9,123 nucleotides of DNA from IMG/VR virus record IMGVR_UViG_3300005964_000039, positions 1 through 9,123 of that record. One strand, written 5' to 3'. A program made the translations under genes and the position numbers. Every line of letters starts with the position of its first letter. Position 1 is the stretch's first letter. Shown piece after piece: positions 1 through 9,123 of this stretch. Below the pieces are notes generated by a model that was not told the origin of the DNA, did no database searches, and was given only the letters and a program-made list of their open reading frames with translations.

Positions 1-830
1 TTAGCGTGAAATTTTCGCAATAAATGAAAAAAATTGAAAATTCCAATATTTTTCGTTTTTTGCAAATTTTTCGTTTTTTTCGCAAAAATGTGTAGAAATT
101 GTAAATTCCAATTAATTTATCATTTCCAAATATTAATTGGAGCGGTGCAAAAAATTGTAAATTCCTAAATTCCAATTAATCTGTCATTTTGCGTTAATTA
201 CACAAAAAATGAGAAAAATTGTAACTTACTAATTTCCTAAATTCCAATTAATCTGTCATATTGTGTAATTTGCTAACTTAAGTTATAAAATTGTAAACTT
301 GTAACTTACAAATATTTGTACATTTTCAGATAAAAACTTTGGAGCTATTATATTTGTAAATTCCTAACTTACAACTAATTTGTTGTTTTGCGAATATATT
401 AGTTATTAACTAAGAAATTAATAGTTAGGGGCTAGTCAACTCCTAATTGCAAATTACAAGTTACTAAACATATTCAGAATTTATTTAAATTATAAATTAG
501 TGGGCACTCAACTCACAGTTTAAAACTAATAGTTACTAAACATATTAGTAATTAGCCTTTTTGTTTTGCACCGATTGTTTTCGCTAGTTTTTTTCGTGTT
601 GCGGTGTTGAAATTGGAAGTTTAGAAAGAAAAGCTTATTAACCCCAAGAAAGCAATTGTTATGAGTAGTGGGCACTATCTTTCTTTTTATTATTATACTA
701 TTAGACATGTTATTACAAACTAATAATATAATATAATAATTTGCTAACTAGTAGTTATATAGTTAGATAGTTATCATATATACTAACTAGTTAGTTAGTA
801 GTTATTAATTTAATAGTTAGAATTGGACCC
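1..830. repeat. Non-coding terminal (ITR-like) region with degenerate direct repeats
   Basis: AAATTG(T/A)AA-type units start at 31, 96, 152, 216, 288 and about 353 (56-72 bp apart). Exact 26-bp repeat TTCCTAAATTCCAATTAATCTGTCAT at 162-187 and 234-259; exact 16-bp repeat AGTTACTAAACATATT at 459-474 and 531-546; TAGTT-rich tract about 745-820. AAATTCCTAAATTCC (159-173) resembles the reverse complement of the AATTTAGG-type repeat recalled near rudivirus termini. The partner ITR is not in the window, so ITR status is inferred. Confidence 0.65.
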
Positions 831-1143
831 AAAATAGATTGTTTTTCGCAATTTCACCGTTACAAGACAATTTTGAGTTTGCATTTTGAAATTATTCCAA
901 CAACGTTCAGATTTGCATTTTCAAATTTGCACTCGTTTGGCCTTATTTTCAAACATTGAAAATCTGAACTTGGCCTCATTTACAAAACAATTTAGTTCAG
1001 GTCCAGATGAAGAAATTAGTGATTTTGGAAGGTCCTTTTGAAGAAAACAGTTTTTCTTAGGAGCAATGGAAGAAATTGGAGGAACAAATTTTGCACGTTC
1101 TCTATAAAGAGAGATGATGATAAGGTATAAAAAGGTAAAGAGG

Positions 1144-1171
1144 TAAAAAGATAGAGAAAGATTTAATAAGG
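1144..1171 (+). promoter_or_regulatory. Repeated early-type archaeal promoter (purine-rich BRE + TATA TTTAATAA)
   Basis: TAAAAAGATAGAGAAAGATTTAATAAGG is identical (28/28) to 2200-2227 and has one mismatch to 2800-2827. TATA starts 38 nt before ATG 1200. Confidence 0.85.
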
Positions 1172-1199
1172 AGTGAAGACAAGATAGATATGAGGAAAA

Positions 1200-1400: not shown

Positions 1401-1480
1401 TTTAGTCTATTTTTTATTTTGTATTCTATTTTTAGGCTAGATTATCGATAATTTTTCTCATTTCTGTTTTATTTTTTTAG
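1401..1480 (+). terminator. T-rich archaeal terminator region
   Basis: Multiple oligo-T runs right after the stop. Contains 22-bp AATTTTTCTCATTTCTGTTTTA (1450-1471), repeated exactly at 4378-4399. Confidence 0.55.
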
Positions 1481-1504
1481 CTTATATTTTTATGCTTATT
1501 TTTT

Positions 1505-1580
1505 CTCATGTTAGAGTTAAGATTACTAAACGTGATAAAATTACAAATCTAAAGATAAAGGAAGTTTTAAATTTGTCATA
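1505..1580 (+). promoter_or_regulatory. Promoter of ORF150 (BRE TAAAGGAAG, TATA TTTTAAAT, downstream TGTCATA)
   Basis: BRE-TATA at about 1557-1572 followed by a GTC motif; GTGA RBS at 1598-1601. The 67-bp block 1505-1571 is duplicated at 3389-3455. Confidence 0.75.
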
Positions 1581-2063: not shown

Positions 2064-2182
2064 TATTATTTTTTTCTTTTTTATAAATCAAATGAGGAAG
2101 ATATTTTTAAATTTATCATATAGCATACTTATTACTTCAAAATTAAGGTAAATTTCTAAGTAAGGGATTAGACGATAAAAAT

Positions 2183-2260
2183 AACGAAAGATAGAGATCT
2201 AAAAAGATAGAGAAAGATTTAATAAGGGGGAGTTACATATGTTATGTTGGTGAAAAGGAA
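2183..2260 (+). promoter_or_regulatory. Repeated early-type promoter and GGTGA RBS, copy upstream of ORF136
   Basis: Tandem AAAGATAGAGA (2187-2197, 2203-2213), TATA TTTAATAA 2218-2225, GGTGA 2249-2253, ATG 2261. Confidence 0.88.
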
Positions 2261-2671
2261 ATGAGTTATCCCAAAAAGGAAGAAATGAATCAAGAAGAAG
2301 AAAAGTTAAGTCAGTTGGATATAGGTCAATTGACAACTGAACAGCTTGGTGAACTAGTTAAGAGGGCGATTGATGAAGGCAAAGATGAGGCAAAGTTCAT
2401 ACTAGTCCTAAGCGAGTGGATGAGACCAGGGCCTTCATTTACAGACAAAGCAGAATTTACAATTCTTTATGGTGAAGTTGAGACTGTATTATTGCATCAT
2501 TATTACAATTATCCGACGACAGATGATTATACGTATGCATTAATTCCAAAAACAAGGACGGTTGTAGTATTATTTAAATGGAAAAATGATTATAAAGGCA
2601 AATTGGAGAAACAGGCTATTCTTTATATTTTTACATATCATAAAGGATGGGTATCAATAGATCTATACTAA
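2261..2671 (+). CDS. Hypothetical protein (136 aa), paralog of ORF140; candidate anti-defence protein
   Basis: About 49% identity (56/114, hand-aligned, ungapped) to ORF140. Shared motifs FILVLSEWxRPGxSFTD, YYxYPTT, YAxIPK, LYxFTYxxGW. Function is inferred from context only. Confidence 0.9.
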   Translation: MSYPKKEEMNQEEEKLSQLDIGQLTTEQLGELVKRAIDEGKDEAKFILVLSEWMRPGPSFTDKAEFTILYGEVETVLLHHYYNYPTTDDYTYALIPKTRTVVVLFKWKNDYKGKLEKQAILYIFTYHKGWVSIDLY

Positions 2672-2782
2672 GATATTTCATTTTTTTATCTTTTTCAGTT
2701 CTTTTTATTAAGCTTAATTTTCTAATTTTATGCTGTATTTTTTTAAAAACTAAGATAATATTTGTATGTTTAGATTTAAAGA

Positions 2783-2860
2783 AACGAAAGATAGAGATCT
2801 AAAAAGATAGAGAAAGATTTATTAAGGGGGAGTTACATAGTATGTATTGGTGAAAAGGAA
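2783..2860 (+). promoter_or_regulatory. Repeated early-type promoter and GGTGA RBS, copy upstream of ORF140
   Basis: Exactly 600 bp downstream of the 2183 copy and near-identical to it. TATA TTTATTAA 2818-2825. Confidence 0.88.
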
Positions 2861-3283
2861 ATGAGTTATCCCAAAAAGGAAGAAATAAATCAAGAGGAAA
2901 CCCATGAAGAGCAAGATATAATTAAGTCAAAACAGGAAGAATTAAGTGACGAAGAATTAAAGGAGCTGATTAAAAGAACATTGGAAAAAGGAGATTTTGA
3001 AGCAGAGTTTATATTGGTTTTGAGTGAATGGAATAGACCTGGAGGAAGTTTTACCGACTTCGGAAAAATTCGACTGCTTTATGGAAAAATTGAAATGTTT
3101 GAGTTGGATAGTTATTATGACTATCCAACAACAAATCAAACTGTGTATGCTATCATTCCAAAAAGCAAACTGGTTATATTACTACATGAAAGCGGAGACG
3201 ATTACCAGGGAAAAATGCAAAGATACGAAAAACTATACGTCTTCACATATTCACATGGCTGGAAATCACTTTCTCTAGATTAG
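2861..3283 (+). CDS. Hypothetical protein (140 aa), paralog of ORF136; candidate anti-defence protein
   Basis: Same MSYPKKEE N-terminus and conserved core as ORF136, acidic N-terminal segment, followed by T-rich terminator. Confidence 0.9.
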   Translation: MSYPKKEEINQEETHEEQDIIKSKQEELSDEELKELIKRTLEKGDFEAEFILVLSEWNRPGGSFTDFGKIRLLYGKIEMFELDSYYDYPTTNQTVYAIIPKSKLVILLHESGDDYQGKMQRYEKLYVFTYSHGWKSLSLD

Positions 3284-3388
3284 TTCAATTATTTTTTTAA
3301 TTTATTTTCTTTTTGTTAAGTTAAGTTTTTTATTTTTTTATTTTTTGCATTCCTAATTATATGTCTTTTATTTTTATCTATAATTTTA

Positions 3389-3455
3389 CTCATGTTACAG
3401 TTAAGATTACTAAATAATAGGAAAATTTGAATCTAAAGATAAAGGAAGTTTTAAA
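3389..3455 (+). repeat. Duplicate of the ORF150 promoter block with no downstream plus-strand gene (orphan promoter)
   Basis: 3389-3414 matches 1505-1530 (25/26); 3430-3455 matches 1546-1571 (26/26). Identity stops at the TATA box. Confidence 0.85.
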
Positions 3456-3511
3456 ATATTTTTTGGGATCTGAAAAAAATTATTTATAAAAAAATAGAAT
3501 GAATTTTATAT

Positions 3512-3919: not shown

Positions 3920-3971
3920 GAATTTTTAGAGTTTGATAGGATGTTTATTGAGAGATAAAAAGATAAAAGTT

Positions 3972-4023
3972 TAGAGAAAACTTTATTAAGGGCCGAGTAC
4001 ATATGCTATAACAGTGATGTGTA
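3972..4023 (+). promoter_or_regulatory. Early-type promoter of ORF98
   Basis: TAGAGAAAACTTTATTAAGGG (3972-3992), then CATATGCTATAACAGTGATG (4000-4019), 18/20 identical to 4480-4499. Confidence 0.82.
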
Positions 4024-4320
4024 ATGAAAGAGATAAAAGTAAGAGATAGGGAACAAAAATTGAAGATAGAACAAAAAGATAGCGGGGAATATTACTATTG
4101 TCCAAAATGTGGACAATTGTTAGTTATATTATATAAAAACAATGAATGGGGAATGATGAGTTCTTGTAAAGATTTCCAATGGGAGGAAATGACAATTAGT
4201 TGTTTTGTTGGGATCGGAGACGAATGTGACCCACAGGAAATAAAGCGATTAAGGTATCAAAGTCTAATACAAATTTTTGACGATTTGTTTGTCAATTTAC
4301 TTATACCGAAGCAAAGTTAA
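4024..4320 (+). CDS. Cys-rich, putative zinc-binding protein (98 aa)
   Basis: YYYCPKCG knuckle plus three further Cys. Own promoter, GTGA RBS and oligo-T terminator. Confidence 0.85.
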   Translation: MKEIKVRDREQKLKIEQKDSGEYYYCPKCGQLLVILYKNNEWGMMSSCKDFQWEEMTISCFVGIGDECDPQEIKRLRYQSLIQIFDDLFVNLLIPKQS

Positions 4321-4450
4321 TTTTTTTATTTTTTTGTTTTTTACGTTCATAATTCTATGTTTTTTATTTTTATGTCAAATTTTTCTCATTTCTGTTTTAA
4401 TATTTCAGAATCAAGAAAATTGAAATACTATAAAATGTATATGTAAAAAA

Positions 4451-4502
4451 ATAGAGAGAACTTTATATATGAGTTTTGTCATATGTTATATCAGTGATGG
4501 AA
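4451..4502 (+). promoter_or_regulatory. Early-type promoter of the winged-helix gene
   Basis: ATAGAGAGAACTTTATATA (4451-4469), TGTCATATG at 4477-4485, GTGA RBS 4494-4497. Confidence 0.8.
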
Positions 4503-4739
4503 ATGGATAGGAAGAAACGAATAGGAAAAAAGGAAAAGGAAGTTTTAGATTTTTTAATACGGAATAATGGTACTGTGTGGAAATCCGATATTCTTGAAAG
4601 GTTTGTGTATGCAAGTCGTTATACTAGTATAATAGAAAAACGGCTTTATAGAATGCAGGAAAAAGGTTTGATATTCATTAACAAAGAGATAAACCCAAAG
4701 ACAGGTCGAGAAAAACAAAGGGTTTATTTAAAGCAATAA
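4503..4739 (+). CDS. Winged helix-turn-helix DNA-binding protein (78 aa from ATG 4503)
   Basis: Pattern KEKEVLDFL...TVWKSDILERF...IEKRLYRMQEKGLI...TGREKQRVYL is typical of wHTH. The ORF-track TTG start at 4476 is only 7 nt after the TATA box, upstream of the expected TSS. ATG 4503 fits RBS and TATA spacing (41 nt vs 42-43 in sister genes). Confidence 0.82.
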   Translation: MDRKKRIGKKEKEVLDFLIRNNGTVWKSDILERFVYASRYTSIIEKRLYRMQEKGLIFINKEINPKTGREKQRVYLKQ

Positions 4740-5054: not shown

Positions 5055-5070
5055 CATGTAAAGTAAATAA

Positions 5071-5134
5071 TAGGCGTAGCGCCTAAGGTGAAGGGGAATC
5101 TGGCGTAGCGCCACATTCCCCGGATTATTTCTGG
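5071..5134 (+). ncRNA. Candidate small structured non-coding RNA with two GGCG-UAG-CGCC hairpins
   Basis: GC-rich island in AT-rich intergenic DNA. Hairpin 1 TAGGCG-TAG-CGCCTA (5071-5085); linker AGGTGAA; hairpin 2 GGGGAAT-C-TGGCG-TAG-CGCCA-C-ATTCCCC (5093-5121); possible third CCGGA-TTATT-TCTGG (5120-5134) with a G-U pair. Promoter at the expected distance, T-rich tracts at 5148-5170, no credible ORF. Confidence 0.68.
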
Positions 5135-5189: not shown

Positions 5190-5522
5190 TTATTTCTTTC
5201 CTTTCCATAAAATTTCCAAACCTTGATTTTTATCCCAAGTTAGTCTTACATTTTTTAATTCTATTCTATCATGATTATTCAAATCTCCAGCAGTAATTTC
5301 TATATCTAAGCTTGATTTAAGAATATGTAAAAATTTATAATCGGGATTGTTTATCAAAAAATTCATTTCTACAAGACTTTCAAAGTCTGCAAAGGACAAA
5401 TCAACTAATGTTAAATTGAAAATATGTATATCATATAATCCATTCTCATATTTCCAATATTTAAAATCTAAACCGTTTTTCTTTAGAAAATCTAAAAGGT
5501 CTTTTCCTTCTTTTACTTTCAA
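5190..5522 (-). CDS. Hypothetical protein (110 aa), translationally coupled to thyX
   Basis: TTG start overlaps the thyX TGA stop (TTGA, 5519-5522); GGTGG RBS at 5529-5533. Confidence 0.8.
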
Positions 5523-6292
5523 AATAAACCACCGAATTTATTTCTAGCATTATTAATACATTTTGCTATATCATTTCTAGGAACGCCTTCTATACACCTT
5601 TTTGAAACGAAATTAGCACTTGAGGAATTTATTACACTTTCTATTGTTACAGGCTCAAAATTTACAAAGTTCTCATGTATCACGCAATTTGGCCCCGCAT
5701 ATTTAAATAGGATAGGATGGACTTTTTTGACTTCTTCCAACATTGCCCATGCTATCTTTCTGATCTCCCACTGTGATCTACTGCACAGCCTTAAGCTGAA
5801 GAAGTTATACAATTCTCTTGCGTTCATGGTCACTACTATGTTAGTGTTTACGCCATTTGGTAAAACATATCTTGCATCTTCTTCAGGAACGCCATTTTCC
5901 AAAAGAGAATAGTAATAATTATAAATTTGCTTATATGCAGTTTCAATAATACCTTTGGCCCTTTTTTCTACTGATTGTGGAACTACTGGTTTGAAAAATT
6001 CATCAATTGGTTTAGCAAATCTGTGGCTCATCTGTGTATAAGAGGCTATCCTGTGCCTGACCAACTGATGAGATGCCACTCTAGATATGTCCTCTATAGA
6101 GAAAGTATAAACTGAATGTTCCAAGACTGACCAATATCCGTGAAGTATGGCGTCTTTTATCCATGTTTCTATCTCTTCTTTTGTCATGTCTTTTTCATGA
6201 TGTTCCCATCCTTTCCTACTCCTAGACATCTTAGATGCTATGGCCACAATTTTCTCCCCATCTTGTGAAAAAGAAACTAATTGAACTTTCAT
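5519..6292 (-). CDS. thyX: Flavin-dependent thymidylate synthase ThyX
   Basis: Signature RHRx7S ([11 protein letters not shown]), plus [23 protein letters not shown] and TMNAREL...LR...QWEIR motifs. Confidence 0.97.
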
Positions 6293-6821: not shown

Positions 6822-6837
6822 TTTTTAGACTTTTAGT

Positions 6838-7452
6838 TTAGAACAGAGATCCATAGCATTTTCCCTTAAACTCACAGTTCTTACAGAAATAGGAATTAAC
6901 AGGCGGTATATTTTTATGATCTTCCATCTTTATATACTCTTTGAATTTCTTAATCCATTCTATCGCTTTTTGTATATATTCATCTATCAATTTTTTATCT
7001 ATTAAGAATTGTTTAACTTCTCTATTTAGCCTATTCAAATATATAATATAGATATTGTCAATTTTATAATTCTGTTGTTGTAAAAGATAGTAATATATAG
7101 CGACTTGGTAAAGATGATATTCTTTTATTTGGAAATAATTAGTTGAAATAGTTTTTAACTCTATAAGATCATTATTACAAATTAGATCTATTCTCCCAGA
7201 TATTTTCATTCCTTCAATTTCGCCATTTATTTCAATTTCAGTCTTACAATTTAACTTTTCTTCAAAATAGTGCTCAACTTTTTCATGATATTGTTCACCT
7301 AGGTCAAGACTAATTTCATTTACTGCTTTCTCAAATTCAAATTTTCTACTGAAATAGCTTTTTCTAAAGCAAATTCCAATTTCGCTAGGAAATATTGTAT
7401 CTTCTGGATATTTCATTTTGAAACTTTGTTTTACAAATTCTTCATAATTCAT
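6838..7452 (-). CDS. cas4: Cas4-like (RecB/PD-(D/E)XK) nuclease, SIRV2 gp19-like, not CRISPR-associated
   Basis: [10 protein letters not shown] first Fe-S Cys, GRID...IELKT catalytic motifs, QxxxY (QVAIY), C-terminal CxxC-x5-C; GGTGA RBS. Confidence 0.93.
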
Positions 7453-7454
7453 AG

Positions 7455-8765
7455 TTATTCACCGCCAAAATTGCTAAATCTCATAAAATTAATTATTTGG
7501 TTACATATTTCATCATTAGTTTTTTGACCTATTTGAAGATCAATATCAAAGGCCTGAAGAATCAGTTGTATATCGATACTTTGTTCTTGTCTTCTGGACT
7601 GAAGAGTATCACAGATTACATAATTTGTTGTTTTATTAATCTTATCTTGAATGATTTCTACTAAGGCCTTCAAAATTGAAGGATATAAAACTCTTCCATT
7701 TATTACTCTTTCATAAGTTTTTTTCACTGCTAATTGTATAATATGAATTCTGTCTAGTATAGCAGAAGTAAATATTTCATAATTGGCTAAATAGTCCTCA
7801 AGGTCAGGAGTTTTTAGCCGATCTATTGTCATAGAATATGGATTTCCTGCGTAAATAATTGGAATACATTTTTGGATAGTTGCTGATTTGGATTCTGAAC
7901 CGGCCCCTCTTGTCCATATACAATTTTCAATTCCGGTTGATAAAGTTGAATTTATGGCATTTAATTCTTTTGCAGAAAATCCATCTTTCCAAGTTTGTAT
8001 TTCGTCAAAAATTAGGCCGTTTGATAGAAATACAGCACCATACATATTATTTCTTGCATCATAAATTAAATTTGCATATGTCGGTGATTCGGTATAATAT
8101 CTAAAGTTAAAAACTTCTTGAAGTATCATGAAAGTTGTAGTTTTTCCAGTTCCTCTATTTGAAATTTCGATATAATTTATCTGTCTTTTTGTAATTGGAG
8201 ATTTAAATAATGGGAACAATCTAGGCAGAAATAAAAATATATCATTTACTTCCATTTTTGTTGGGTCATATCCGAAAGCCTGAAGAAGAAGGGCATATGT
8301 TTGTTTTTCTGAATTAGCTATCTCGAATAATTCTTTTGCAATTTCGTAATTATTTGGTGGTTCAATTGAATAAATATCTGATATATACCAATTTTCTACT
8401 CCTTTTCTTATTTTAACAAACATGTAACTAGTTACTAAATTGTAAAAATCATCAGGATTATCAGCAATTTGGTGAGGATCAAAAGAGCCTACAAATCCAT
8501 TTTGAAATCTTGCTATTATTTCATTTCCTTTAACTTTAAAATTTGTTATCTTAGAGATGAATTTTATTTCATTGAAAAATGGCAAATTAGAGTTAAAATA
8601 TTGTTGATCAGTCCCACGTTTATAAGCCTTTAAAATTCCATTTTTCTTAGATTCTTCAATTTGTTTTTCACCAATTATGAGATTTAAAATTCTTTCAGTA
8701 TCACGGGGATTATAAAAAAATGTATGAGATTTTACTTTATCCAAAAGACTAACTGAACTGCTCAT
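7455..8765 (-). CDS. AAA+ ATPase (Lon/MCM-like), SIRV2 gp18-like putative helicase
   Basis: Walker A RGTGKTT, Walker B LIFDE, sensor-1 IYAGNP, Arg finger AILDR; 436 aa; lies between the SSB and Cas4-like genes as in rudiviruses. Confidence 0.9.
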
Positions 8766-8771
8766 GAAAAA

Positions 8772-8804
8772 AATGATAACTTATGACGTTTTAAAACTCT
8801 TCCT
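8772..8804 (-). promoter_or_regulatory. Putative internal TATA+GTC promoter of the ATPase gene
   Basis: Minus strand GAAGAG-TTTTAAAA-CGTCATAAGTTATCATT; TATA (8789-8796) overlaps the upstream stop codon and ends 24 nt before ATG 8765. Confidence 0.6.
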
Positions 8805-9123
8805 CAACGTTCTTTTTACTAGTCTTTTTTGTTTTTTCCGCTTTTTCACTTTCTTCTTCATCACCAAGTTCCAATTCTTCTTCTTGGACTCTATTATTAT
8901 TTCTACTAGTAAATCTTACGTATTCATTAAGCAAATCTGCATATTTTTCCAGAAACTCTGAGATTAGTCTTAAATCTTCAGCATCATTAGCAGTTATTCC
9001 TATCTGCTTCCTGAAGTTATTTTGACTATGGATAGTCATACTGTATCTTACTTTTCCGTCCTGAGGAATGGCATTTAGTTGCACTACAATTCGCTTTATA
9101 CCTTTGATTTTTAATATTCTAGA
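8791..9123 (-). CDS. Rudiviral ssDNA-binding protein (SIRV2 gp17-like), 5'-truncated by the window edge
   Basis: Frame is open to 9123: SRILKIKGIKRIVVQLNAIPQDGKVRYSMTIHSQNNFRKQIG..., matching the recalled SIRV ORF131 family. Acidic, disordered C-tail ending EEEF. The ORF-track start at 9084 is an internal GTG. Confidence 0.88.
   Translation of the reverse strand, partial: SRILKIKGIKRIVVQLNAIPQDGKVRYSMTIHSQNNFRKQIGITANDAEDLRLISEFLEKYADLLNEYVRFTSRNNNRVQEEELELGDEEESEKAEKTKKTSKKNVEEEF

What the first reader, a model, noticed from the sequence alone, without database searches (positions are those of the whole stretch)
2183..3283. Tandem paralogs with homogenised promoters but diverged proteins (600-bp cassette)
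Seen: 2183-2295 and 2783-2895 differ at only 7 of 113 positions (promoter, RBS, first 12 codons), five of them clustered at 2240-2246 near the predicted TSS, while the protein cores are only about 49% identical. Aromatic/Pro/Gly motifs (SEWxRPGxSFTD, YYxYPTT, DYxGK, GW) are invariant and the intervening residues vary. Inference: recent gene conversion or cassette exchange at the promoter, with diversification of a binding surface, consistent with a host-virus arms race.
Basis: partly seen in the sequence, partly recalled or inferred. Interest (0 to 1): 0.62.

Follow-up and report, generated by a model that had tools for sequence, protein, structure and literature searches.

The report
Two stacked rudivirus anti-defence gene alleles
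Near the end of a Yellowstone Sulfolobus rod-shaped virus genome, two old and very different versions of one predicted anti-defence gene sit side by side behind almost identical early promoters; the promoter type and gene family are already published, and comparison with other samples shows the promoter-plus-first-codons piece is swapped between genes by recombination.

Summary
Windows 2183-2295 and 2783-2895 differ at 7 of 113 bases, five of them at 2240-2246, and the proteins (136 and 140 aa) are 50% identical.

The window is the left terminal region of a Usarudivirus-like (SIRV) metagenome contig. Both genes belong to phrog_10536, which is family ADG.05 of Bhoobalan-Chitty et al. 2024, a predicted and untested early anti-defence family. 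The shared block is that paper's conserved early regulatory sequence (BRE, TATA, leader) plus 12 codons. It occurs five times in the window and upstream of single-copy homologues in other rudiviruses, so much of the similarity is purifying selection.

The two cores are not sister copies:
- Synonymous sites are saturated (pS 0.74).
- Each core groups with genes of other viruses.
- A WA+WB clade is rejected (p-AU 1.5e-6).

The 5' module has its own, recent, mosaic history. It is shared by three deeply diverged alleles, is absent from their nearest core relatives, and is exchanged in 10-60 nt patches between samples that are identical through the gene body.

Gene-wide dN/dS is 0.11-0.20, which gives no signal of diversifying selection. 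WB in the second slot rests on one assembly. Interest is moderate.

The parts
2183..2260 (+). Reg1, the early-gene regulatory module of WA. It has two purine-rich direct repeats AAGATAGAGA (2188-2197 and 2204-2213), a purine-rich BRE-like stretch (about 2209-2217), TATA box TTTAATAA (2218-2225), an initiator-region patch (2236-2247; TSS inferred at about 2243-2248) and Shine-Dalgarno GGTGA (2249-2253), 7 nt before the ATG.
   Evidence: Read directly from the sequence. It is one of 5 copies of family D1, and it aligns with regions upstream of ADG.05 homologues in SIRV5-10, V3/V60 and IMG/VR loci. It matches the BRE + TTTAWATA consensus described in PMC11065993. The TSS position is inferred, not measured.
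2261..2671 (+). WA, an ADG.05 / phrog_10536 protein of 136 aa. Codons 1-12 (2261-2296) belong to the shared 5' module; the core starts at about codon 13.
   Evidence: phrog_10536 E 1.3e-30. The family is listed as ADG.05 in the supplement of PMC11065993. Exactly the same protein is found in two other samples, L027 and L028. The nearest core is P0001 at 90%. AF2 model: pLDDT 83.7, a disordered N-tail, helices, and a 7-strand beta meander.
2672..2782 (+). T-rich terminator-like spacer after WA. Its first ~60 nt resemble the spacers after other cassettes. A unique junction stretch (about 2735-2782) leads into Reg2.
   Evidence: Alignment of cassette flanks. The stretch 2270-2811 is identical in L027 and 2200-2839 is identical in L028. 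Logan contigs of three runs span 2390-2812, 2229-2812 and 2379-2822.
2783..2860 (+). Reg2, the early-gene regulatory module of WB. It has the same elements as Reg1, with TATA box TTTATTAA (2818-2825), the alternative initiator patch (2840-2846) and SD GGTGA (2849-2853).
   Evidence: The initiator patch is identical to that of L019 (P0004) and of SIRV isolate V60.
2861..3283 (+). WB, an ADG.05 / phrog_10536 protein of 140 aa. Codons 1-12 belong to the shared 5' module. The core belongs to a different allele lineage (with P0008, P0006 and L011).
   Evidence: phrog_10536 E 1.2e-30; core tree; found only on the window's own contig.
3284..3471 (+). T-rich terminator-like spacer after WB. It is the common downstream flank of the slot and contains a copy of a second promoter-like motif (3425-3471).
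   Evidence: The same flank follows the single ADG.05 gene of L019 and L020 and the 50-aa ORF of L028. Repeat families D2, D4 and D9.
1130..1199 (+). Regulatory module copy upstream of the 66-aa ORF (1200-1400).
   Evidence: D1 copy at 74%. It shares a 29-nt exact core, including BRE and TATA, with Reg1.
3950..4023 (+). Regulatory module copy upstream of the 98-aa zinc-ribbon-like ORF (4024-4320).
   Evidence: D1 copy at 72%; alignment; only weak zinc-ribbon Pfam hints.
4430..4499 (+). Regulatory module copy upstream of the 79-aa wHTH ORF (4500-4739). That ORF belongs to family ADG.02, a putative MarR-like regulator.
   Evidence: D1 copy at 63%; phrog_9113 E 1.1e-30; its SIRV7 homologue YP_009362503 is listed as ADG.02.

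Best explanation
The window is the left terminal region of a linear Usarudivirus-like (SIRV-type) genome from a Yellowstone hot-spring metagenome. Positions 2183-3283 hold two gene cassettes of the ADG.05 family, which is predicted to encode immediate-early anti-defence proteins of unknown target. Each cassette has three parts: (i) a ~78-nt early regulatory module with purine-rich repeats, BRE, TATA box, initiator and SD; (ii) an ORF encoding a disordered acidic N-tail, a short helical part and a seven-strand beta domain; (iii) a T-rich terminator-like spacer.

Shown:
- The two ORF cores are old, separately evolving alleles of a slot that holds one gene in related viruses.
- The regulatory module is a genome-wide and lineage-wide conserved element.
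- On top of that conservation, the proximal module plus the first 12 codons has been copied between unrelated alleles and patched in 10-60 nt tracts. This happened very recently, between viruses whose gene bodies are otherwise identical.

Inferred:
- The tandem arose when recombination through the conserved promoter and terminator modules placed a second allele next to the first (allele stacking). It did not arise by in-place duplication.
- Gene conversion between the adjacent modules then homogenised them. The direction is unresolved.
- Both genes fire together immediately after infection from these strong promoters and are later repressed by a virus regulator (Aca8 encoded elsewhere, or the ADG.02 wHTH at 4500-4739).
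- Carrying two alleles widens the range of host defence variants that the virus can neutralise.
For: Identity of the element. The window has megablast hits only to SIRV genomes, 76-81% in the core genes, and it is an IMG/VR record of 9123 bp. WA and WB match phrog_10536, which is ADG.05 in the supplement of PMC11065993. The paper describes the conserved BRE/TATA regulatory sequence in front of terminal early genes.

Regulatory conservation. The window has five module copies. In the 78 nt upstream of the start codon, WA is 60-82% identical to homologues of other viruses, against 92% to WB.

Old cores. pS is 0.74 and dN 0.43-0.45. WA pairs with P0001 (support 95/98), and WB groups with P0006, P0008 and L011 (89/92). 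A WA+WB clade is rejected at p-AU 1.5e-6, and a WA+WB+P0004 clade at p about 1e-32.

A one-gene slot in relatives. L019 has o150, P0004, then the same downstream flank. L020 (34 kb) has the same gene order with one copy.

Mobile 5' module. The N-terminus MSYPKKEEMNQEE and its leader are shared by WA, WB and P0004. P0001, which is 90% identical to WA, has another leader and N-tail, and its similarity to WA resumes at codon ~13.
- L027 (another sample) has 0 differences from the window over 2270-2811 but 11 differences in 2188-2269. At all 11 sites the window's WA equals the window's WB.
- L028 (a third sample) has 0 differences over 2200-2839, then a different initiator/SD patch and an unrelated 50-aa ORF in the second slot.
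- V3 and V60 have identical coding sequences but different promoters.
Against: WB directly after WA is seen only in the window's own JGI contig. Logan contigs break inside the repeats and do not bridge 2812-2857, and L028 has another gene in that slot. No Aca8 homologue is present in the window. No expression data, no TSS mapping and no functional test exist for ADG.05, which is only a prediction in PMC11065993. There was no fold or sequence link to any known inhibitor. The direction and number of conversion events cannot be fixed. L028 shows WA with the same proximal leader as in the window, so L027 may be the converted copy instead.
Confidence: 0.72

Rival explanations
1. Assembly chimera. 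WA and WB are alternative alleles of the same slot in two co-occurring virus strains, and the assembler joined them through the shared regulatory module. The tandem would then not exist in any one genome.
For: The same metagenome (3300005964) also holds another rudivirus contig with a WB-like gene, L011. WB is found in slot 2 only in this one contig. L028 has a different gene in that slot after an identical 640 nt. Logan contigs do not bridge 2812-2857.
Against: The WA-spacer-junction-Reg2 arrangement is real. It is identical in L027 and L028 from other samples and in contigs of three runs, so a second cassette does follow WA. WB's leader combines a P0004-type initiator patch, a WA-type SD/codon-3 patch and WB-specific codons within 60 nt, which single reads would cover. 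In run X1 the WA-junction contig and the WB contig have similar low depth (5.8 and 4.5), while other variants are 100-1000 times deeper. The contig passes correctly through four other module copies.
Confidence: 0.13
2. Selection only. The 5' identity of WA and WB is due entirely to purifying selection on a regulatory element and translation-initiation region, with no gene conversion or recombination.
For: The module is conserved in front of unrelated genes in the window and in front of homologues of other viruses. The left border of the WA/WB identity (2183) coincides with the border of conservation in SIRV9 and SIRV10.
Against: The first 12 codons are 34/35 identical, although they encode a poorly modelled tail (pLDDT 53-58) that is unalignable among homologues. 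The closest core relatives of WA and WB carry different leaders and tails. The same gene body carries different module patches in three samples. V3 and V60 show the converse pattern.
Confidence: 0.07
3. A recent in-place tandem duplication, followed by very fast amino-acid divergence of the cores under positive selection (arms race), while the promoter stayed unchanged.
For: Tandem arrangement with a 600-bp period. The genes lie in an anti-defence gene neighbourhood.
Against: Synonymous sites are saturated as well (pS 0.74). Each core has closer relatives in other viruses, and the WA+WB clade is rejected. dN/dS is 0.11-0.20 in all informative pairs.
Confidence: 0.03

Closest known systems
ADG.05 family and the consensus early regulatory sequence of rudiviral anti-defence genes (Bhoobalan-Chitty et al. 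2024, Nat Commun 15:3699, PMC11065993)
   Same: Homologous proteins: the SIRV5-10, V3/V60 and SIRV1-XX members are listed as ADG.05. The genes are small and single, lie at a genome terminus, and each is preceded by a strongly conserved BRE + TATA module shared with neighbouring unrelated genes.
   Different: Here two deeply diverged family members stand in tandem, whereas every other genome or contig examined has one. No Aca8 is present in the 9-kb window. The paper does not discuss recombination; the word occurs 0 times in its main text. The function of ADG.05 is untested there.
AcrID1 paralogue clusters at the termini of SIRV1/2/3 (He et al. 2018, recalled from memory; summarised in PMC11065993)
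   Same: Multiple diverged copies of one small early gene lie close together near rudivirus termini, many behind the consensus regulatory sequence, and are interpreted as duplication and functional diversification.
   Different: There is no detectable homology: hhalign probability is 6.8% against a SIRV1-XX AcrID1 homologue, and there is no PDB sequence hit at E <= 1. Here the copies are shown to be non-sister alleles rather than local duplicates.
PeSL (promoter-early stem-loop) mobile regulatory cassettes of T4-type phages (Arbiol et al. 2010, PMC2839356; Comeau et al. 2014, PMC4122927)
   Same: Conserved promoter/terminator motifs flank small non-essential early genes in hyperplastic regions. 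Recombination between these motifs shuffles, inserts and replaces the genes (abstract). Searches show the same pattern here.
   Different: The promoters here are archaeal BRE/TATA promoters with T-rich spacers, not sigma-70 promoters with stem-loops. The virus is a rudivirus with a linear hairpin-ended genome. Mini-circles were not looked for. This is an analogy of mechanism only, with no family membership.
Variable peripheral genes of Yellowstone SIRVs (Bautista et al. 2017, PMC5454432)
   Same: Variable genes cluster at the genome periphery and are under purifying selection. Gain and loss, rather than sequence diversification, are proposed to drive the arms race. This fits dN/dS 0.11-0.20 here.
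   Different: That study did not resolve allele stacking or exchange at the level of single promoters.

Membership tests
ADG.05 / phrog_10536 (predicted rudiviral/lipothrixviral anti-defence gene family) | Significant sequence similarity to family members | tested here: met
   phrog_10536 E 1.3e-30 and 1.2e-30. tblastn hits to SIRV V3/V60/V65, SIRV1-XX and SIRV5-10 genes, which are listed as ADG.05. BFVD fold matches to SIRV10, AFV7, ARV2 and AFV2 proteins at E 8e-10 to 2e-6.
ADG.05 / phrog_10536 (predicted rudiviral/lipothrixviral anti-defence gene family) | Single gene preceded by the virus's consensus regulatory sequence with a strong BRE/TATA promoter, shared with other single genes of the same genome | tested here: met
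   Five copies in the window, two of them in front of WA and WB. The elements were read from the sequence. The criteria are those.
ADG.05 / phrog_10536 (predicted rudiviral/lipothrixviral anti-defence gene family) | Transcription immediately after infection | not testable with these tools
   This is an uncultured metagenome contig. Only DNA runs held it, none on record as RNA.
ADG.05 / phrog_10536 (predicted rudiviral/lipothrixviral anti-defence gene family) | Inhibition of a host defence system | not testable with these tools
   No member of the family has been tested. It is not mentioned in the main text of PMC11065993, and there is no informative fold match.
Acr-Aca8 locus (rudiviral) | An Aca8 wHTH gene in the locus | tested here: not met
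   tblastn of V3 Aca8 against the window found no hit at E <= 10. The window is about 30% of a genome, so Aca8 may lie elsewhere. An ADG.02 MarR-like wHTH is present at 4500-4739.
Acr-Aca8 locus (rudiviral) | Homology to a characterised archaeal Acr (AcrID1 tested) | tested here: not met
   hhalign probability 6.8% against a SIRV1-XX AcrID1 homologue. No PDB chain at E <= 0.43. AcrIIIB1, AcrIIIB2 and AcrIII-1 were not compared directly, but Pfam gave no hit.
Gene conversion / recombination tract between paralogous cassettes | A sharply bounded tract of near-identity inside otherwise saturated divergence | tested here: met
   7/113 differences against pS 0.74 in the core; borders at 2183 and 2296.
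Gene conversion / recombination tract between paralogous cassettes | Phylogenetic incongruence between the tract and the flanking sequence | tested here: met
   The core tree rejects WA+WB (p-AU 1.5e-6) and WA+WB+P0004 (p about 1e-32), although these three share the 5' module.
Gene conversion / recombination tract between paralogous cassettes | Compared with the same gene in a sister genome, the tract carries the states of the neighbouring paralogue; direction of transfer identifiable | tested here: inconclusive
   All 11 window-versus-L027 differences match WB. However, L028 carries WA with the window's proximal leader and a different neighbour, and the 2081-2199 segment may come from another virus. 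Exchange is shown; direction is not.
PeSL-type mobile regulatory cassettes | Composite sigma-70 early promoter plus stem-loop terminator in T4-type phages | tested here: not met
   The promoters are archaeal BRE/TATA and the spacers are T-rich without the PeSL structure. It works like PeSLs but is not a member.

The most novel reading that the evidence does not exclude
In rudiviruses the conserved early regulatory module (promoter, leader and first codons), together with the T-rich terminator spacers, may serve as portable homology for recombination. The genome termini would then behave as a cassette-shuffling system, an archaeal-virus counterpart of T4 PeSLs or of integron cassettes. That system swaps, stacks and replaces anti-defence genes and alleles on a timescale shorter than one substitution per 500 bp. 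The ADG.05 slot would be a hypervariable locus where long-lived alleles are maintained in the population and occasionally stacked.
Probability: 0.4. Interest if true: 0.6.

Novelty: new member of a known kind. Interest (0 to 1): 0.4.

Why it matters
Anti-defence genes of archaeal viruses are mostly unknown proteins, now found through their shared early promoter. This locus adds three points:
- The promoter module is itself a unit of exchange. The same gene body is found behind different module patches and next to different neighbours in three samples.
- The ADG.05 slot carries several deeply diverged alleles on an otherwise ~85-98% identical backbone.
- A virus may carry two such alleles at once.

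If confirmed, this gives a concrete mechanism for the gain-and-loss arms race proposed for SIRV variable genes. It also offers a natural pair of alleles for testing the specificity of an uncharacterised anti-defence family. It does not change the known picture of what these promoters or families are.

Tried and rejected
- Pfam: no family for WA or WB.
- PDB by sequence profile: nothing below E 0.43.
- Foldseek against PDB: no match at E <= 0.001.
- VIA-align wide search: best Z 5.9, which is below the stated noise level of 7-8. There were only weak Ig-like similarities (engineered protein, chagasin-like inhibitor EhICP2).
- ESM Atlas by features: no usable hit. By shape: weak DsbD-N and Inhibitor_I42-like rows, TM 0.42-0.52. 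These are not used as evidence of function.
- AcrID1 homology: rejected.
- Aca8 in the window: not found.
- Rfam and tRNA scans: nothing relevant.
- Laying Logan contigs of four runs confirmed WA-to-Reg2 but could not bridge Reg2 to WB, because the unitigs break in the repeats.
- An exact-pattern scan of metagenome contigs with the junction sequence found only the window's contig and L028.
- An early reading that the conversion ran WB to WA (from alone) was withdrawn after L028.
- The sigma-70 promoter/terminator scanner was not used, because it does not cover archaeal promoters.
- The large representative-protein search and the complex prediction were not run, because no claim here rests on absence of relatives or on binding.
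Full report
**1. What the window is**

The 9123-bp window (27.8% G+C) gives megablast hits only to Sulfolobus islandicus rod-shaped viruses. The hits are at 76-81% identity and confined to the conserved genes at 6837-9123 and to the terminal repeats. It is an IMG/VR virus record of exactly this length, estimated at about 30% of a genome. The record is JGI 3300005964, contig Ga0081529_120453.

Bases 1-900 carry the direct repeats typical of rudivirus termini. Next come small plus-strand ORFs. After them, on the minus strand, lie ThyX (5519-6292), a Cas4-like nuclease (6838-7452) and a 436-aa ATPase. A 34-kb Yellowstone contig (L020) has the same gene order.

**2. The observation**

Positions 2183-2295 and 2783-2895 differ at 7 of 113 bases: 2222, 2240-2242, 2244, 2246 and 2287. 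The borders are sharp. There is no similarity upstream of 2183, and identity falls to chance level a few bases after 2296. The exact runs of 39 and 40 nt compare with a maximum of 18 in 100 Markov resamples.

The ORFs WA (2261-2671, 136 aa) and WB (2861-3283, 140 aa) are 50% identical.

**3. What the block is**

Reading the sequence, the 78 nt before each ATG contain:
- two purine-rich repeats, AAGATAGAGA;
- a purine-rich BRE-like stretch;
- a TATA box, TTTAATAA in Reg1 and TTTATTAA in Reg2;
- an initiator region;
- GGTGA, 7 nt before the start codon.

The repeat finder reports five copies of this module in the window, at 1130, 2186, 2786, 3950 and 4430. Each lies in front of a small plus-strand ORF, and the ORFs are unrelated to each other.

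This is the phenomenon published by Bhoobalan-Chitty et al. 2024 (PMC11065993). Small single genes at rudivirus termini, including known anti-CRISPR genes, share a highly conserved regulatory sequence with a strong BRE/TATA promoter and are expressed immediately after infection. The paper uses the motif to predict anti-defence genes, or ADGs.

WA and WB match phrog_10536. Their homologues in SIRV5-10, V3/V60 and SIRV1-XX are that paper's family ADG.05, annotated only as 'conserved among several archaeal viruses'. The main text does not mention or test ADG.05. The 79-aa wHTH at 4500-4739 belongs to ADG.02, a putative MarR-like regulator. No Aca8 is in the window.

**4. How much of the identity is plain conservation**

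The same module stands upstream of single-copy ADG.05 genes in other viruses. WA's 78 upstream bases are 78% identical to those of SIRV10 and L016, whose proteins are only about 33% identical to WA. They are 60-82% identical to the other homologues, and 54-63% identical to the three non-homologous cassettes of the window. Against WB the figure is 92%.

The left border of the WA/WB repeat coincides with the border of conservation in SIRV9 and SIRV10. Purifying selection on a regulatory element therefore explains most of the similarity, but not all of it.

**5. The cores are old alleles, not a diverged duplicate**

In the core (about codon 24 to the end), nucleotide identity is 58%, pS is 0.74 (saturated) and dN is 0.43-0.45. 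Every other genome or contig examined has one family member.

In a 17-sequence maximum-likelihood tree of the core:
- WA pairs with P0001 (93% identity, support 95/98);
- WB falls with P0006, P0008 and L011 (89/92);
- holding WA and WB together costs 60 log-likelihood units (p-AU 1.5e-6, with a smaller set).

L019 carries a single allele (P0004) between the same upstream neighbour (the 150-aa ORF) and the same downstream flank. L020 carries yet another allele (P0003) in the same backbone. The slot is therefore a hypervariable one-gene locus, and the window holds two of its alleles.

**6. The 5' module has its own, recent history**

(a) The leader and the N-terminus MSYPKKEE(M/I)NQEE are shared by WA, WB and P0004. 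These three do not form a clade in the core (p about 1e-32).

(b) P0001 is 90% identical to WA. It has the same distal module up to the TATA box, then an unrelated leader and N-tail. Its identity to WA resumes at codon ~13, exactly where WA/WB identity ends.

(c) L027 comes from another sample (3300006179). It encodes the identical WA protein and shows 0 differences from the window over 2270-2811. It has 11 differences in 2188-2269, and at all 11 the window's WA has the base of the window's WB.

(d) L028 comes from a third sample. It is identical to the window over 2200-2839, but it has a different distal Reg1 (of the 66-aa ORF type), a different initiator/SD patch in Reg2, and an unrelated 50-aa ORF where WB stands.

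(e) The five clustered differences at 2240-2246 are two alternative patches. The WA form recurs in L027 and in both modules of L028. The WB form recurs in L019 and in isolate V60.

(f) Conversely, V3 and V60 have identical coding sequences behind different promoters.

The shared N-tail is modelled with low confidence (pLDDT 53-58) and is unalignable across the family, so protein-level constraint does not explain its nucleotide identity. Together these results show patchy recombination or gene conversion of the module, within and between genomes.

The direction of any single event is not resolved. alone suggests the window's WA was converted toward WB. However, L028 carries WA with the window's proximal leader beside a different neighbour. 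The window-specific segment 2081-2199 also extends beyond the repeat.

**7. Is the tandem real?**

The arrangement WA, spacer, unique junction, second module is reproduced in L027, in L028 and in Logan contigs of three runs. WB as the occupant of the second slot is seen only in the window's contig. Logan unitigs break inside the repeats and cannot bridge 2812-2857.

Three points argue against a chimera:
- WB's leader mixes a P0004-type initiator patch, a WA-type SD/codon-3 patch and WB-specific codons within about 60 nt.
- In run X1 the WA-junction and WB contigs have similar low depth.
- The contig passes correctly through four other module copies.

I put the chimera at about 0.13. In run X3 a contig continues 349 nt past 2822 with sequence unlike the window, which hints at a further slot-2 variant.

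**8. The protein**

AlphaFold2 with a 17-row alignment gives mean pLDDT 83.7 and pTM 0.71. The model has a low-confidence N-tail, helices at 7-17, 26-39 and 42-46, and seven consecutive beta strands from 48 to 134. BFVD matches are only family members from SIRV10, AFV7, ARV2 and AFV2.

No solved structure matches convincingly: Foldseek found none, and the best VIA Z of 5.9 is below the noise level. There are only weak Ig-like, DsbD-N and chagasin-like similarities. There is no homology to AcrID1.

They lie in strands and turns. The most variable parts are the N-tail, the helices, and strand segments 75-80, 105-109 and 115-120.

Gene-wide dN/dS is 0.11-0.20 in every informative pair, including WA against P0001 (dS 0.26, dN 0.03). 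This agrees with Bautista et al. 2017, who found purifying selection on SIRV variable genes. Diversifying selection on a surface is therefore neither shown nor excluded at the level of single sites.

**9. Mechanism proposed**

Shown: the shared early module, the old alleles, and the mosaic 5' module.

Inferred:
- The tandem arose by recombination through conserved promoter and terminator modules between co-infecting viruses.
- Conversion then acted between the adjacent modules.
- Both genes are expressed immediately after infection and later repressed.
- Two alleles broaden the range of host defence variants that are countered.

[quoted passage not shown] This is an analogy only.

**10. Verdict**

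The element type and the gene family are already published, so I file this as a new member of a known kind. It comes with an interesting and testable population-genetic twist, and interest is about 0.4.

Noticed in passing
window 5068-5122: A G+C-rich double hairpin (GGCGTAGCGCC twice; outer stem GGGGAAT/ATTCCCC) lies in the AT-rich spacer between two minus-strand ORFs. The RNA fold z-score is -5.5. It is conserved in L020 and L021 with one compensatory A-T to G-C pair change. There is no Rfam match. It could be a terminator, a small RNA or a protein-binding site.
   Followed up: partly
window 2081-2128 (also 1541-1587 and 3425-3471): A 48-nt insertion just upstream of Reg1 is absent from L027 and L019. 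It is a 77% copy of a second promoter-like motif found in front of the 150-aa ORF (family D9). A third copy downstream of WB has no ORF behind it.
   Followed up: partly
window 1410-1571 vs 3294-3455: A 162-nt direct repeat at 70% identity (family D4, spacing 1884) brackets the block 150-aa ORF - WA - WB. L020 lacks the 150-aa ORF in this position. The whole block may therefore be an insertion between repeated spacer modules.
   Followed up: no
L028 761-913: In a third sample, an unrelated 50-aa acidic ORF occupies the slot that WB holds in the window. It sits behind a Reg2 whose distal 57 nt are identical to the window's.
   Followed up: partly
L003 (OM401712, V3) and L005 (OM401713, V60): The two cultured isolates have identical ADG.05 coding sequences (dS 0) but clearly different promoter and leader sequences. 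The gene lies at record positions 1496-1894 in V3 and on the complement strand at 33950-34348 in V60, that is, near opposite ends as deposited.
   Followed up: partly
window 1-900: The terminal region has direct repeats of about 47 nt spaced 63-72 nt apart (families D3 and D6) and a 72-nt spaced pair at 415-553. Bases 158-237 match the annotated repeat_region of Stygiolobus rod-shaped virus at 81.5%.
   Followed up: no
window 2379-2822, run X3: One Logan contig (793 nt) matches the window up to 2822, just inside the TATA box of Reg2. It then continues for 349 nt with sequence that does not fit the window. This may be another occupant or leader variant of the second slot.
   Followed up: no
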